A stretch of DNA of 64,000 nt, from the IMG/VR virus record IMGVR_UViG_3300021197_001489, positions 124,001-188,000 of that record; one strand, written 5' to 3'. The notes under the pieces are model-generated. The model was not told where the DNA came from and did no database searches. It worked only from the letters and a program-made list of their open reading frames with translations. The stretch's first letter is position 1, and each line of letters starts with the position of its first letter. Shown piece after piece: positions 19,487 to 23,259 of this stretch. Position numbers and translations under genes: made by a program.

Positions 19487-20677
19487 ATGTCACAAGAACT
19501 ACTAGAAAGCCGTTGGGATGAGACCAAAGAAGCCCTCCTAGAAGGCCTCGGTGGCGCTCGCCGCTCAACAATGAGTGTTGTACTAGAAAACACTCGCAAG
19601 CACTTGGCAGAAAACGCAACTGCAGGTTCTACAGCATCAGGAAACGTTGCTACATTGAACCGCGTTATTCTTCCAGTTATCAGACGTGTCATGCCAACAG
19701 TTATTGCTAACGAGTTGGTTGGTGTTCAGCCAATGACAGGTCCAGTTGGCCAAATTCACACACTTCGTGTACGTTATGCCACTACAATGACAGACAACTC
19801 AGCAGCAGGTACTTCAACAGTAGCTGGTGAAGAAGCTCTTTCACCATTCAAAATTGCCCAGGCATATTCCGGTTCAACTGGAGCGACTGCGGCAGCTTAT
19901 ACTGCAGGTAACACAGCAGCCATGGAAGGTGTTGGCGGACGTCAAATTTCAGTACAGATCTTAAAGCAAGCTGTTGAAGCAAAGACACGCAAGCTACAAG
20001 CTCGCTGGACATTTGAAGCAGCACAAGACGCACAAGCCATGCATGGTATTGACGTTGAAGCTGAAATCATGGCAGCACTTGCACAAGAAATCACAGCTGA
20101 AATTGATCAAGAGATCCTATTTTCTCTTCGCACACTAGCAGCTACTGAGTTCACATACAACCAAGCAACTGTATCAGGTACAGCTACTTACGTTGGTGAC
20201 GAGCATGCAGCACTTGCAGTTCTAATCAACAGAACAGCTAACTTGATCGCTCAGCGTACACGTCGTGGCGCAGGCAACTATGCTGTTGTTTCTCCTGCTG
20301 CACTTACAGTGCTTCAGTCAGCTACAACTTCAGCTTTTGCTCGCACAACAGAAGGCGTCTTCGAAGCACCAACAAACACTAAGTTTGTAGGTACATTGAA
20401 TGGCACAATGCGTGTATTCTGCGATAGTTATGCAGCTGATACAACTCCAGTACTTGTTGGATACAAAGGTGCAAGTGAAACAGACGCTCCAGCGTTTTAT
20501 TGCCCATACGTTCCACTAATGAGTTCAGGCGTTGTCTTGGATCCAAGTACATTCGAGCCAGTCGTATCATTCATGACACGTTATGGTTATATCGAGCTTA
20601 CAAACGTAGCATCTTCATTCGGCAACGCCGGTGATTATGTTGGTGAGATTGCAGTATCTAACTTGTCATTCTCATAA
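19487..20677 (+). CDS. gp23: Major capsid protein (T4 gp23-like)
   Basis: 'VGVQPMTGPVGQIHTLR', 'AKTRKLQARWTFEAAQDAQAMHG', 'FYCPYVPL', 'FMTRYG'. Confidence 0.97.
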   Translation: MSQELLESRWDETKEALLEGLGGARRSTMSVVLENTRKHLAENATAGSTASGNVATLNRVILPVIRRVMPTVIANELVGVQPMTGPVGQIHTLRVRYATTMTDNSAAGTSTVAGEEALSPFKIAQAYSGSTGATAAAYTAGNTAAMEGVGGRQISVQILKQAVEAKTRKLQARWTFEAAQDAQAMHGIDVEAEIMAALAQEITAEIDQEILFSLRTLAATEFTYNQATVSGTATYVGDEHAALAVLINRTANLIAQRTRRGAGNYAVVSPAALTVLQSATTSAFARTTEGVFEAPTNTKFVGTLNGTMRVFCDSYAADTTPVLVGYKGASETDAPAFYCPYVPLMSSGVVLDPSTFEPVVSFMTRYGYIELTNVASSFGNAGDYVGEIAVSNLSFS

Positions 20678-20709
20678 GCCAAAAACAAACCTGCTTTGCG
20701 GGGGAGAAG

Positions 20710-20738
20710 AAACAGCACCTTCGGGTGCTGTTTTTTTT
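20710..20738 (+). terminator. Rho-independent terminator after major capsid gene
   Basis: AAACAGCACC-TTCG-GGTGCTGTTT followed by a T run. Confidence 0.9.
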
Positions 20739-20769
20739 GTTTTAAATTTTATTATACTTAAATACTGTC

Positions 20770-21834
20770 ATGAATATACATTGGCGCTACAATTATGATT
20801 ATAAAAGTTTCATCTGGGTTGATGGAAATCCAAACCAAAGCTATCAACCATTGATGGATCATGTAGCCATTCCTACATTAATTATTGACATTAATTTGGT
20901 TAAAGCCATTGATCTTGAATCATACTTGAATTATGTATTAGATGCCGCAATCACAGACAATAATCCAATAAGTTATAAACAATTGATATTTGATGCAACG
21001 TATGACCCTGTGTACGATTACAAAGAAAAAGTGGAAATTTTGAATGACTATGTGAAGAACAAAGGCATCCCTGGGTTTTTAAGTGTAAGTCATTTTGAGG
21101 TAAACTATCATAGCCATCTAGTAGAAATACTGTATCCTAGTTGGTTGTTTTCTTTCAAAAGACAAAAATTACCAGAACTAAACCTAACAGAAAAAAAATG
21201 GAAGTATAGCTGCTTAAATCGAAATCCTATATGGCATCGTTTGATGTTTTATACAATGATTAAAGAAAAAAATCTATTAGACCAATTTGTTTATACATTC
21301 TATGATCGATGTCCATACATTGGTACATTAGTTGACGGACACTATTATGCTAAAACTGACCATTTTTTTGAAGATTATTACGGTAGATGTATGGAAAACA
21401 TATCTGATTTGCCATTATCATGGCCTAACGATGTCCCAGGACACAGCGATCATACATTAAATCATGACGCTTATATCAACGCAGAATGTAACATTGTTAC
21501 AGAAACAAGTGTTTCGGTTAGTTTCACTAGTGAGAAAATTTGGAAACCAATTGCAGCTGGTCAAATCTTTCATGTTGTTGGCAGTGCGTATACCAACAAA
21601 TGGTTGCAAAGTCTAGGGTTCTATACATTTGATACAGGGTATGATTCAATCATTGATAATGTACAGCGTATTGAGGCAGTCGCTAATCTGGTCGAAAGAG
21701 AAATTGAGACCGCTGCAACCAGGTGGGAGCTACGGAAAACATTTTTTTATGTTCAACAGAATTATCACTTGTTTCATAGCGGAGCAGTTGAAAAAATTAT
21801 TTTAGATCCACTGATTGCACTCCTAAATAAGTAA
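20770..21834 (+). CDS. Hypothetical protein, possibly glycosyltransferase-like
   Basis: AT-rich; 'YSCLNRNP..HR', 'NIVTETS...FTSEKIWKPI...F..VG'; TTAAATA promoter at 20758-20764. Confidence 0.5.
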   Translation: MNIHWRYNYDYKSFIWVDGNPNQSYQPLMDHVAIPTLIIDINLVKAIDLESYLNYVLDAAITDNNPISYKQLIFDATYDPVYDYKEKVEILNDYVKNKGIPGFLSVSHFEVNYHSHLVEILYPSWLFSFKRQKLPELNLTEKKWKYSCLNRNPIWHRLMFYTMIKEKNLLDQFVYTFYDRCPYIGTLVDGHYYAKTDHFFEDYYGRCMENISDLPLSWPNDVPGHSDHTLNHDAYINAECNIVTETSVSVSFTSEKIWKPIAAGQIFHVVGSAYTNKWLQSLGFYTFDTGYDSIIDNVQRIEAVANLVEREIETAATRWELRKTFFYVQQNYHLFHSGAVEKIILDPLIALLNK

Positions 21835-21840
21835 AATTTA

Positions 21841-21940
21841 CTAAATAACTGTAACATAACGCAATAATGCGTTTTATGCGGAATACCATCCGCGTAGTGG
21901 GCTAGAACCCACATCGGACTTCTATAAAGGAGAAAACAAC
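21841..21940 (+). promoter_or_regulatory. Late promoter plus structured leader (two hairpins and an H-type pseudoknot)
   Basis: CTAAATA at 21841-21847. Stems 21858-63/21868-73, 21875-82/21889-96 and 21897-901/21908-12; loop TAGAA pairs with TTCTA at 21920-24; AAGGAG follows. Confidence 0.6.
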
Positions 21941-22615
21941 ATGGGACGTCCTCTCAAAATTAAAAAATCAGCAACCACTGACATTGGTTTCAACAATCCA
22001 GGTGATGATTCATCACCAAGAGTACCAGCTGGCGAACTATACTTTGGTCAAGTTGGCGGAGACACAGCTTTAGCTAACGGCGACAATCCAGTCACATCAT
22101 GCCGTGTCAAAATTGGCTCAGTGGCAGAAGCTGAAGGTTATATCATCCGTCAAAAAGGTGCAACCAAGTACCTAGTTGCTGATGCAACTGGTGTTACAGC
22201 CGGTTCGTTTGTTACTAGTAACACATATATTATTACTTCACTTGGCAACACTGATTTCACTCTTGTTGGCGGTCCAGCAAATGCAGCAGTTGGCACAACA
22301 TTCGTAGCTACCGGCGCAGGCTCAGGCTCAGGCACAGTGGATACAATTGGTACATGTGTACTGGCTAACAAGGCTGATGCTTCTTTAGCAGCAGATGAAA
22401 TGACAATAACTTACTCAGATGTTGGATCAGGTCAAGTTCGCATCAAGCGCATGACTAACAAATATGCAATTAACTTTTCTGATGCTAGAGTTGTAGTTAA
22501 CTACTTTAACATCATTGATGATACAGTTGAGAAGTCAGGTGCTGATAAAGACACAATGACAGGTGGTGTATCAACTATTGACGTAGTACAGGTTGAGAAT
22601 CCAATCTACGGTTAA
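21941..22615 (+). CDS. Virion structural protein (post-capsid, decoration-like)
   Basis: Strong RBS and own terminator; Thr/Gly/Ala-rich. Confidence 0.55.
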   Translation: MGRPLKIKKSATTDIGFNNPGDDSSPRVPAGELYFGQVGGDTALANGDNPVTSCRVKIGSVAEAEGYIIRQKGATKYLVADATGVTAGSFVTSNTYIITSLGNTDFTLVGGPANAAVGTTFVATGAGSGSGTVDTIGTCVLANKADASLAADEMTITYSDVGSGQVRIKRMTNKYAINFSDARVVVNYFNIIDDTVEKSGADKDTMTGGVSTIDVVQVENPIYG

Positions 22616-22635
22616 TAAACACTTTTTAACTAACC

Positions 22636-22671
22636 AAGCCCTCATTGTAATAACTACAGTGAGGGTTTTTT
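22636..22671 (+). terminator. Rho-independent terminator
   Basis: 14-bp stem AAGCCCTCATTGTA / TACAGTGAGGGTTT (2 G-U pairs) plus T run. Confidence 0.75.
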
Positions 22672-23259
22672 ATGAGTGCAGCATTTATATTGGGAAACGG
22701 CAGAAGCAGATTAGTACTTGATCTCAATATGCTAATGGAAGTTGGCTATGTATTTGGTTGCAACGGATTGTACAGAGACTTCACACCTCACTGCTTGGTT
22801 GCCACTGATAGACCAATTGCTGAAGAAATACAAAATTCTGGATATGCTGAAAAGCACAGATTTCACACACGCAAGCCCATTGAAAGTCTTGGAGGCAGAT
22901 CTCTTATTAGAGAGTACAAAGGTTTTAGCAGCGGGCCAAATGCTGCTGCACTTGCACTTGTTGACGGTCACAGCGACATATACCTAATAGGTATGGATCT
23001 TGGCAGCACAAACGGCGTGTTTAACAATGTTTACGCAGGAACACAGTTTTACAAACAAGAACTTGCTTCACAAACATTTCCCGGCAACTGGATTAATCAG
23101 GTTGTTAAACTCACTGAAGACTTTGAAAGTAGACAGTTTTGGAGAATTGAAGGACCCGAAAGTGCATTTGTTCCACAGTTTAATAAAATACCAAACATGC
23201 GGATTTTGTCAATGGACAAGTTTAAAGAGAAGGTAAATACTGCTAGAGGTCCACTATGA
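22672..23259 (+). CDS. Hypothetical, DUF115/MptE-like (GT-D-like) Rossmann protein, copy 1
   Basis: 'AFILGNGRSR...VFGCNGLYRDF...LVATD...SSGPNAAALA...IYLIGMD'. Confidence 0.55.
   Translation: MSAAFILGNGRSRLVLDLNMLMEVGYVFGCNGLYRDFTPHCLVATDRPIAEEIQNSGYAEKHRFHTRKPIESLGGRSLIREYKGFSSGPNAAALALVDGHSDIYLIGMDLGSTNGVFNNVYAGTQFYKQELASQTFPGNWINQVVKLTEDFESRQFWRIEGPESAFVPQFNKIPNMRILSMDKFKEKVNTARGPL

What the first reader, a model, noticed from the sequence alone, without database searches (positions are those of the whole stretch)
21858..21940. H-type pseudoknot abutting the RBS of the post-capsid structural gene
Seen: after the late promoter there are two hairpins, then S1 GTGGG/CCCAC (5 bp), L1 of 1 nt, S2 TAGAA/TTCTA (5 bp) and L3 of 7 nt, ending a few nt before AAGGAG. 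CGGA in L3 could alternatively pair with TCCG of the preceding hairpin. Established: the T2/T4 gene 32 translational operator is a pseudoknot of similar geometry. Inference: a translational operator or switch that sets the stoichiometry of this protein.
Basis: partly seen in the sequence, partly recalled or inferred. Interest (0 to 1): 0.62.

Follow-up and report, generated by a model that had tools for sequence, protein, structure and literature searches.

The report
Known phage leader RNA, pseudoknot unsupported
The stretch is a textbook copy of an already catalogued but functionally unexplained RNA motif (Rfam freshwater-2) that forms the 5' leader of a late gene next to the capsid gene of an uncultured giant phage. 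The proposed pseudoknot can be drawn here but is not conserved among relatives.

Summary
After a TAAATA late-promoter-like box come three hairpins: H1 21858-21873, H2 21875-21896 and H3 21897-21912. The H3 loop UAGAA can pair with UUCUA (21920-21924), 3 nt before AAGGAG.

The region 21857-21943 is a full-length match to Rfam RF02980, freshwater-2 RNA (68.5 bits, cut-off 49.9). The element is therefore already catalogued, with no known function.

I collected 167 distinct homologous leaders from viral metagenome contigs. H1, H2 and H3 are supported by compensatory changes. The pseudoknot stem S2 is not:
- The loop UAGAA essentially never changes.
- The 3' strand is absent in 116 leaders that have a short spacer.
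- It is a perfect 5 bp in only 14 of the 51 leaders with a long spacer.
- No pair shows a change on both sides.

New context:
- TAAATA precedes 166 of 167 leaders.
- In 174 of 178 copies the gene that follows encodes a protein starting MGRP.
- That gene sits downstream of the major capsid gene in 131 loci.
- All 44 protein-first homologue loci with enough upstream sequence carry the motif.

Most likely this is a gene-specific, RNA-level translation and stability leader with a sequence-specific factor-binding core (H2 plus the H3 loop). It is not a gene-32-type pseudoknot operator.

The parts
20705..20738 (+). Rho-independent terminator after the major capsid gene (19487-20677). In relatives without the 354-aa insertion it directly precedes the promoter and leader.
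   Evidence: 15-bp stem, T-run. Searches show the layout terminator, TAAATA, leader within 73-140 nt of the capsid gene in about 50 loci.
21841..21851 (+). Late-promoter-like box CTAAATAACTG (TAAATA at 21842-21847), of the T4 TATAAATA type. The inferred transcription start is about 21853-21855.
   Evidence: TAAATA lies 20-50 nt upstream of the UAUGC anchor in 166 of 167 distinct leaders and mostly 5-15 nt before H1. The related word TAAATACTG occurs 6 times in the window, all on the + strand, against 0.96 expected, and 9 forward to 0 reverse in the genome. The transcription start is inferred, not measured.
21858..21873 (+). H1: 6-bp hairpin AACGCA-AUAA-UGCGUU. It is variable in sequence, conserved as a structure, and sits near the 5' end of the transcript.
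   Evidence: fold. 150 of 167 leaders have a hairpin here, with 128 different sequences.
21875..21896 (+). H2: UAUGCGG(A)...(U)CCGCGUA, the nearly sequence-invariant core stem with a C-rich loop.
   Evidence: 7 pairs. Pair 6 covaries (G-C 103, A-U 27, U-A 19, G-U 1) and there is an invariant U-G wobble. Those positions were fixed by my search pattern, but 44 of 44 protein-first loci show the same stem.
21897..21912 (+). The stem covaries freely and the loop N-UAGAA-C is almost invariant.
   Evidence: 53-78 sequences carry compensatory changes at each of the three consensus pairs. Loop variants are only UUAGAAC (L022, L027) and CUAAAAC (L045).
21903..21924 (+). Candidate pseudoknot stem S2: UAGAA (21903-21907) with UUCUA (21920-21924). 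It can be drawn but is not supported as a conserved element.
21913..21923 (+). Optional conserved box AUNGGACUNCU (here AUCGGACUUCU), present in 51 of 167 leaders ('class A'). No pairing partner was found.
   Evidence: GGAC/GUCC pairing with codons 3-4 is not conserved across box variants.
21927..21943 (+). Strong RBS AAGGAG, then the A-rich spacer AAAACAAC, then AUG. This is conserved family-wide as AAGGAGAAAACAAAUG.
21941..22615 (+). The regulated gene: a 224-aa all-beta protein of unknown function that starts MGRPLKIKK.
   Evidence: No PHROG, Pfam or PDB sequence match. AF2 pLDDT 79. Fold matches are only to uncharacterised phage proteins and weak SH3/Tudor-like barrels, Z <= 4.2. 652 homologues, all 'hypothetical', all metagenomic.
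22636..22671 (+). Terminator closing the unit: a 14-bp hairpin plus U6. The next ORF's ATG (22672) follows the U-run directly.
   Evidence: -23 kcal/mol for 22610-22675, z -6.0.

Best explanation
Shown: window 21857-21943 is a full-length member of the catalogued RNA family freshwater-2 (Rfam RF02980). It is three tandem hairpins followed by a strong Shine-Dalgarno sequence. It lies in a 316-kb uncultured jumbo-phage genome, behind a T4-type late-promoter box, and forms the 5' leader of a short promoter-leader-gene-terminator unit. The gene belongs to a family whose products all begin MGRP and which sits just downstream of the major capsid gene.

Inferred mechanism: the element acts as RNA, on the + strand, as a gene-specific leader. 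H1 caps the 5' end and probably protects the message. The sequence-invariant H2 stem and H3 loop (UAUGCNG...CNGCGUAG...NUAGAAC) form a recognition platform for a trans-acting factor, either a phage or host protein or the ribosome. This platform is held 5-30 nt upstream of the SD, so occupancy would set the rate of translation initiation of this one protein.

The H-type pseudoknot is not part of the conserved mechanism. At most it is a weak, lineage-specific extra in leaders that carry the AUNGGACUUCU box.

The confidence value is a composite. Family membership and context are near certain. The factor-binding mechanism is about 0.4.
For: Family membership: 68.5 bits against a gathering score of 49.9, model positions 1-84 of 84, E 1.6e-10. 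There is one copy and one MGRP gene in the genome.

RNA structure:
- The three hairpins fold at z -4.9.
- H2 pair 6 shows G-C, A-U and U-A, and H3 pairs carry 53-78 compensatory sequences.
- H1 is present in 150 of 167 leaders with 128 different sequences.

Strand and RNA level: the invariant U-G wobble in H2 and the G-U pairs in H3 work only on the + strand.

Transcript context: TAAATA is present in 166 of 167 leaders. TAAATACTG is strand-biased and enriched. Terminators flank the unit.

Gene specificity:
- 174 of 178 leaders precede an MGRP ORF, with synonymous codon variation (CGU 91, AGA 66).
- 44 of 44 protein-first loci carry the motif.
- Tandem paralogues each have their own copy (L143, L219).
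- The cultured relatives Phosso and Vibrio phage 2.275.O lack both the motif and the gene.

Sequence invariance of a stem and a loop beyond what pairing needs is the usual signature of a specific binding site. That step is inference.
Against:
- Much of the apparent invariance of H2 and H3 comes from sequences retrieved with a pattern that required those bases. Only the 44 protein-first loci are unbiased.
- All carriers belong to one phage lineage (capsid protein 70-95% identical). Co-occurrence of leader and gene could therefore reflect co-inheritance rather than functional coupling.
- A passive stabiliser or enhancer role would explain the hairpins without any factor.
Confidence: 0.55

Rival explanations
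1. An H-type pseudoknot (S1 = H3, S2 = UAGAA/UUCUA, L1 1 nt, L3 7 nt) next to the RBS acts as a translational operator or switch of the T4 gene 32 kind.
For: - The pairing exists in the window.
- It spans 28 nt, like the T4 pseudoknot component (PMC535899).
- Among leaders with the long spacer, complementarity of at least 5 bp to the H3 loop is commoner than in shuffles: 15 of 28 distinct variants against 6.4 expected.
- Two lineages gain a sixth pair: UUAGAA/UUCUAA in L205, and AUAGAA/UUUUAU in another register.
Against: - No S2 pair shows a change on both sides, and 73-99 of 150 rows have no 3' strand at all.
- The 116 short-spacer leaders show no enrichment: 7 of 93 variants against 5.7 expected.
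- Within the 51 long-spacer leaders the 3' strand is UUCUA in 14, UUCUG in 3, UUCUU in 13, UACUN in 13, UCCUA in 6 and CUCUUU in 2, while the loop stays UAGAA.
- The class A enrichment is confounded by shared descent of the GGACUUCU box.
- S2 is worth only -3.1 kcal/mol as a duplex and competes with a -8.4 kcal/mol hairpin.
- The other defining features of the gene 32 operator are absent.
Confidence: 0.08
2. A passive leader. The hairpins only stabilise the late mRNA against 5'-end-dependent decay and keep the strong RBS unstructured. No specific factor is involved.
For: - The hairpins start within a few nt of the inferred 5' end.
- RNAalifold predicts no consensus structure between H3 and the AUG.
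- The median predicted probability that the SD is unpaired is 0.61.
- The gene is a self-contained unit with a strong promoter, RBS and terminator.
Against: - A stabiliser needs structure, not sequence. H1 behaves that way (128 different sequences), but the H2 stem and H3 loop are held constant across proteins that have diverged beyond BLAST recognition.
- The element is tied to one gene family and is not seen on other late genes: one copy in 316 kb.
Confidence: 0.22
3. A mobile regulatory cassette. The conserved terminator, late promoter, leader and first codons serve as a homology patch for recombinational swapping of the variable gene behind the capsid gene, like the PeSL cassettes of T4-type phages. 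This can coexist with a regulatory role.
For: - The downstream ORFs range from 116 to 512 aa. The N-terminus MGRP is invariant, the middles and C-termini vary, and one carries GLEYA/PA14.
- In the window a 354-aa ORF sits between two copies of the promoter-like box (20759-20767 and 21842-21851).
- The spacing between the capsid gene and the motif varies from 73 to 5922 nt through insertions.
- PeSL precedent: PMC4122927.
Against: Compensatory changes in H1, H2 and H3 and strand-specific wobble pairs show selection on RNA structure, which recombination alone does not explain. No recombination breakpoints were mapped.
Confidence: 0.1
4. A transcription-level element. The nascent hairpins modify RNA polymerase (put-like), or bind an N-like basic peptide (boxB-like H3), so that polymerase reads through the terminator at 22636-22671 into the downstream genes.
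For: - The position is just downstream of a promoter.
- H3 is a 3-5 bp G+C-rich stem with a purine-rich loop.
- The next ORF starts right after the terminator's U-run with no promoter box of its own.
- The product's N-terminus is basic (MGRPLKIKK).
Against: - The tight, conserved placement against the SD and AUG points to translation.
- The product looks like a variable-length, all-beta structural protein, not a small regulator.
- No test was possible.
Confidence: 0.04

Closest known systems
freshwater-2 RNA motif (Rfam RF02980, type Cis-reg). From my own recollection it was reported among the 224 candidate structured RNAs of Weinberg et al. 2017 (PMC5737381). The main text held here does not mention it and no supplement is held.
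   Same: Full-length match above the curated threshold. It has the same three hairpins, the same conserved UAUGCgG...CcGCGUAG and cUAGAAC, and the same AAGGAGAAAAcA-AUG tail.
   Different: Nothing structural differs. What is added here is context: the carriers are jumbo-type phages, the element is preceded by a T4-type late-promoter box, it follows the capsid gene, and it always serves an MGRP-family gene.
T4/T2/RB69 gene 32 translational operator
   Same: It is a 5' leader of a phage gene. A candidate H-type fold of about 28 nt with a 1-nt L1 and a 7-nt L3 lies upstream of the RBS.
   Different: - The gene 32 operator needs the pseudoknot plus a >40-nt unstructured UUAAA/UAAA tract and is bound by gp32, an ssDNA-binding protein (PMC535899).
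- Here the pseudoknot is not conserved and S2 ends 16 nt from the AUG.
- S2 is 5 bp; from memory, the T2 stem is 7 bp.
- The product is not gp32-like.
Phage lambda N / nutL boxB (from my own knowledge, not tested here)
   Same: A small G+C-rich hairpin with a purine-rich loop sits in the leader of the gene whose product has a basic N-terminal peptide. That leader is known to mediate both antitermination and autogenous translational repression.
   Different: No sequence or fold relation was shown. The product here is larger, all-beta and of very variable length, and the element has three hairpins.
PeSL promoter/terminator cassettes of T4-type phages (PMC2839356, PMC4122927)
   Same: A conserved composite of terminator, promoter and stem-loop flanks variable ORFs. 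In the window an inserted ORF is bracketed by two promoter-box copies.
   Different: PeSLs carry early promoters and occur many times per genome in hyperplastic regions. This element is a late-promoter leader, single-copy and tied to one gene family, with clear RNA covariation.

Membership tests
Rfam RF02980 freshwater-2 | Covariance-model score at or above the curated gathering score over the full model | tested here: met
   68.5 bits against 49.9, model positions 1-84 of 84, window 21857-21943 on the + strand.
Rfam RF02980 freshwater-2 | Three consecutive hairpins with a conserved H2 stem sequence and cUAGAAC loop, followed by SD and AUG | tested here: met
   Alignment to the consensus, the fold and covariation among 150 relatives.
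Rfam RF02980 freshwater-2 | Cis position in the 5' UTR of a protein-coding gene | tested here: met
   The AUG at 21941 is the last model position. 174 of 178 leaders precede an MGRP ORF.
T4 gene 32-type translational operator | A folded pseudoknot conserved among homologous leaders | tested here: not met
   S2 has 0 pairs with change on both sides. It is absent in 116 of 167 leaders and is a perfect 5 bp in 14 of 51 long-spacer leaders.
T4 gene 32-type translational operator | An adjacent >40-nt unstructured tract with UUAAA/UAAA repeats that includes the RBS (PMC535899) | tested here: not met
   There are 16 nt between S2 and the AUG, with one UAAA at 21925-21928.
T4 gene 32-type translational operator | The regulated gene encodes the ssDNA-binding protein that is the repressor | tested here: not met
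   No Pfam, PHROG or PDB match. The model is all-beta with only weak SH3/Tudor-like similarity, Z <= 4.2.
T4 gene 32-type translational operator | Autogenous repression of translation | not testable with these tools
   This needs binding and translation assays.
H-type RNA pseudoknot (generic) | Two stems with loop lengths able to span them | tested here: inconclusive
   S1 5 bp, L1 1 nt, S2 5 bp and L3 7 nt can be drawn. S2 is worth only -3.1 kcal/mol as a duplex. No pseudoknot-aware folding tool was available.
PeSL-type mobile regulatory cassette | A composite terminator/promoter repeated at the borders of inserted or swapped ORFs | tested here: inconclusive
   Two promoter-box copies bracket ORF 20770-21834, and the capsid-to-motif distance is variable. 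No breakpoint analysis was done.

The most novel reading that the evidence does not exclude
freshwater-2 could be the operator of an autogenous circuit. In this reading, unassembled MGRP protein binds the invariant H2/H3 platform of its own late mRNA and shuts off its translation. Binding would be through its invariant, basic N-terminal peptide, in the manner of lambda N on boxB or a ribosomal protein on its leader. This would match supply of a capsid-associated protein to capsid assembly. In the window's sub-lineage, the AUNGGACUUCU box and its weak pairing with the H3 loop would modulate this.
Probability: 0.12. Interest if true: 0.6.

Novelty: already known. Interest (0 to 1): 0.3.

Why it matters
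The motif is one of many orphan structured RNAs known only from metagenomes. Placing it is useful: the carriers are jumbo-type phages, it follows a T4-type late-promoter box, and it serves one hypervariable gene next to the capsid gene.

That turns the orphan into a concrete, testable case of gene-specific post-transcriptional control of a virion-associated protein. It also gives a handle, the leader plus the MGRP start, for finding this gene family, whose members are otherwise too diverged to recognise. Showing that the pseudoknot is not conserved saves effort on a gene-32 analogy that the data do not carry.

Tried and rejected
- **uORF in the leader.** An ORF could start at the invariant AUG of H2 and end at the invariant UAGs. 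The frames split 39, 68 and 60 among UAG1, UAG2 and other stops, and the peptides are not conserved. Rejected.
- **GGAC (21916-21919) pairing with GUCC of codons 3-4.** This is the SD/AUG-enclosing MFE hairpin. It is not conserved across box variants and not significant (z -0.79).
- **H2 loop CCCA pairing with UGGG of AUG-GGN.** At least 4 bp are possible in 127 of 167 leaders, but this is no better than shuffled loops and it fails in the ACAAAA-loop lineage.
- **Literature.** Searching for 'freshwater-2' returned only unrelated papers. The Weinberg 2017 main text does not mention it and no supplements are held.
- **INPHARED phages.** There was no tblastn hit for the protein and no blastn hit for the leader. 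The closest cultured capsid relatives lack both the motif and the gene.
- **Genome contigs pattern scan.** The pattern was too loose for 596 Gb.
- **Protein function.** Nothing came from Pfam, PHROGs, PDB sequence search, Foldseek PDB, VIA-align wide, the ESM Atlas feature search or the word-index homologue search.
- **Not used.** The metagenome-contig scan and the large representative-protein search were not run, because they would not have changed the verdict.

Full report
**1. What is in the sequence**

The interval lies between ORF 20770-21834 (354 aa) and ORF 21941-22615 (224 aa), both on the + strand. Reading 5' to 3':
- CTAAATAACTG at 21841-51
- H1 AACGCA-AUAA-UGCGUU at 21858-73
- H2 UAUGCGGA-AUACCA-UCCGCGUA at 21875-96
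- H3 GUGGG-CUAGAA-CCCAC at 21897-912
- AUCGGAC at 21913-19
- UUCUA at 21920-24
- UA, then AAGGAG at 21927-32
- AAAACAAC, then AUG at 21941

RNAfold gives the three hairpins at -24.8 kcal/mol, z -4.9, with 0 of 200 shuffles as good.

RNAfold does not use the H3 loop. It pairs GGACUUCUAU with AUGGGACGUCC instead. That hairpin is worth -8.4 kcal/mol and is not better than shuffles (z -0.79).

**2. It is a catalogued motif**

cmscan against Rfam 15 gives one hit in the whole 64-kb window. It is RF02980, freshwater-2 RNA (type Cis-reg), at 21857-21943 on the + strand: 68.5 bits against a gathering score of 49.9, model positions 1-84 of 84, E 1.6e-10.

The Rfam consensus structure is three hairpins followed by an unpaired tail that ends AAGGAGAAAAcA-AUG. 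No pairing is annotated in the model line for the tail.

The window is part of a 316,012-bp IMG/VR virus record, about 91% complete, and it holds exactly one copy. The capsid gene is 66-70% identical in DNA to RaK2-, PA5oct- and fHe-Yen9-04-type jumbo phages.

From memory, the motif comes from the Weinberg et al. 2017 survey and has no assigned function. The copy of that paper available here does not mention it and its supplements are not held.

**3. Relatives**

I used three retrievals:
- (a) Protein-first, with the 224-aa product: 45 loci.
- (b) The DNA pattern UAUGCGGAA..CCGCGUAG..CUAGAAC.

Together they gave 178 distinct leaders, or 167 after trimming to the region from H1 to the AUG. Retrieval (a) is blind to the RNA, and all 44 of its loci with enough upstream sequence carry the motif.

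Retrievals (b) and (c) fix the H2 and H3-loop bases by construction. Invariance there must be read with that in mind.

**4. What is conserved**

- **H2.** It has 7 pairs. Pair 6 is G-C in 103, A-U in 27, U-A in 19 and G-U in 1. A U-G wobble is invariant.
- **H3.** Each consensus pair has 53-78 sequences changed on both sides. The loop is N-UAGAA-C, with only UUAGAAC and CUAAAAC as variants.
- **H1.** MAFFT misaligns it. Per sequence, 150 of 167 leaders fold a hairpin ending within 4 nt of UAUGC, using 128 different sequences.
- **Strand.** The wobble pairs work only on the + strand, so the structure is selected in the transcript and not as a DNA palindrome.
- **Downstream of H3.** RNAalifold finds no consensus pairing.

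**5. The pseudoknot test**

The spacer after H3 comes in two forms. 'Class B' (116 leaders) is a short A-rich spacer, median 9 nt, with nothing complementary to the loop. 'Class A' (51 leaders, including the window) carries a conserved box AUNGGACUNCU.

In class A the loop stays UAGAA while the S2 3' strand varies:

| 3' strand | Leaders | Pairing with UAGAA in this register |
|---|---|---|
| UUCUA | 14 | 5 bp |
| UUCUG | 3 | 5 bp with a G-U |
| UUCUU | 13 | 4 bp |
| UACUN | 13 | 3 bp or fewer |
| UCCUA | 6 | 3 bp plus an isolated pair |
| CUCUUU | 2 | not in this register |

On the alignment, S2 has no pair with a change on both sides. Between 73 and 99 of the 150 rows are gapped there. The terminal U-A pair is unpaired in 46 of 77 informative rows, and the A-U pair at columns 86/101 in 22 of 51.

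At the level of distinct loop-plus-spacer variants, complementarity of at least 5 bp is enriched in class A (15 of 28 against 6.4 expected). It is not enriched in class B (7 of 93 against 5.7). The class A excess is largely one inherited box, so it is not independent evidence.

For the window itself:
- The shuffle P is 0.046.
- The S2 duplex energy is -3.1 kcal/mol.
- From general knowledge of pseudoknot geometry, a 1-nt L1 across a 5-bp stem is tight.

My reading is that the pseudoknot is drawable, weak, lineage-restricted and unsupported by covariation. I give about 8% that it is functional in this clade.

It also needs the C of the box, which varies C, U or A without any compensating change.

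**6. Context that explains more than the pseudoknot does**

- **(i) Promoter.** TAAATA lies 20-50 nt upstream of the UAUGC anchor in 166 of 167 leaders, mostly 5-15 nt before H1. In many relatives a rho-independent terminator sits just upstream. In the window, TAAATACTG occurs 6 times, all on the + strand, against 0.96 expected, and 9 forward to 0 reverse in the genome. Most of the window copies sit just upstream of ORF starts. This matches the T4 late-promoter type TATAAATA (established knowledge). The leader therefore begins a late transcript within a few nt of H1. The transcription start is inferred.
- **(ii) Terminator.** A strong terminator at 22636-22671 closes the gene.
- **(iii) Gene family.** 174 of 178 leaders precede an ORF starting MGRP[LIV][KNR]. 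Synonymous codons vary (Arg CGU 91, AGA 66; Pro CCA, CCU, CCG), so that constraint is on the peptide. The ORFs run from 116 to 512 aa and form one BLAST cluster. They share a small beta-barrel segment that can lie near either end, and one has a GLEYA/PA14 domain.
- **(iv) Position.** In 131 loci the motif lies downstream of, and on the same strand as, a capsid gene 70-95% identical to the window's. In about 50 of them it is within 73-140 nt.
- **(v) Paralogues.** Tandem paralogues each carry their own leader (L143, L219).
- **(vi) Absence in relatives.** Cultured relatives by capsid gene (Phosso, Vibrio phage 2.275.O) have neither the motif nor the gene. INPHARED has no match.

**7. The regulated protein**

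There is no PHROG, Pfam or PDB sequence match. The AF2 model has pLDDT 79 and is all-beta, with a disordered basic N-terminus.

Foldseek finds only uncharacterised phage proteins. VIA-align gives SH3/Tudor-like barrels at Z <= 4.2, below what counts as meaningful. The 652 sequence homologues are all unnamed and metagenomic, and some sit on contigs of 300-540 kb.

The gene sits next to the capsid gene, its outer domains are hypervariable, and one relative carries a carbohydrate-binding domain. On that basis a capsid-associated (decoration-like) role is my guess. It is not shown.

**8. Mechanism**

- **Shown.** The element is an RNA-level, + strand, gene-specific leader behind a late-type promoter box, next to a strong RBS.
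- **Inferred.** H1 acts as a 5' cap-like stabiliser. The H2 stem sequence and the H3 loop form a specific binding platform whose occupancy tunes initiation. Which factor binds, and whether it activates or represses, is unknown.
- **Excluded.** A uORF.

**9. Verdict**

The element is real and conserved, but it is already in Rfam. The pseudoknot and the gene-32 analogy are not supported. The added value is the genomic and transcriptional context of an orphan motif.

Noticed in passing
window 20757-21834: The 354-aa ORF between the capsid gene and the leader has no PHROG or Pfam match. It starts 5 nt after a second promoter-like box (TAAATACTGTC-ATG) and has no Shine-Dalgarno sequence. The same TAAATA-N5-ATG layout recurs in homologues 66-68% identical (L009 type). 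This suggests a leaderless late mRNA, and an insertion bracketed by two promoter copies. Relatives such as L002 lack the ORF.
   Followed up: partly
window 20759, 23234, 24642, 38456, 50257, 61131 (+ strand): TAAATACTG occurs 6 times, all on the + strand, against 0.96 expected, and 9 forward to 0 reverse in the whole 316-kb genome. Most of the window copies sit just upstream of ORF starts. It is a candidate late-promoter consensus for this phage.
   Followed up: partly
window 21913-21923; class A leaders, e.g. L063, L133, L140: An optional conserved box AUNGGACUNCU lies between H3 and the SD in 51 of 167 leaders and occurs with many different H3 stems. No conserved pairing partner was found. 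It loosely resembles the H3 loop word (NUAGAAC against AUNGGAC).
   Followed up: partly
L143:1427-4612 and L219:456-2123: Two phage contigs carry two MGRP-family genes in tandem, of different lengths. Each gene has its own TAAATA box and freshwater-2 leader.
   Followed up: partly
window 21941-21952 and all homologues: The first four residues MGRP are invariant across a family whose remaining sequence diverges beyond BLAST detection and whose length runs from 116 to 512 aa. Synonymous codons vary, so the peptide itself is constrained. One member (L240:990-2111) ends in a GLEYA/PA14 carbohydrate-binding domain.
   Followed up: partly
window 22636-22674: The ATG of the next ORF (22672) follows the U-run of the terminator directly, with no SD or promoter box in between. 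That gene's expression would depend on read-through or on some unrecognised signal.
   Followed up: no
window 21883-21888 and 21941-21946: The C-rich H2 loop (family consensus ACCCA, here ACCAU) is complementary to AUGG/UGGG of the start and Gly codons in 127 of 167 leaders. This is not better than shuffled loops, and it is absent in the ACAAAA-loop lineage.
   Followed up: yes
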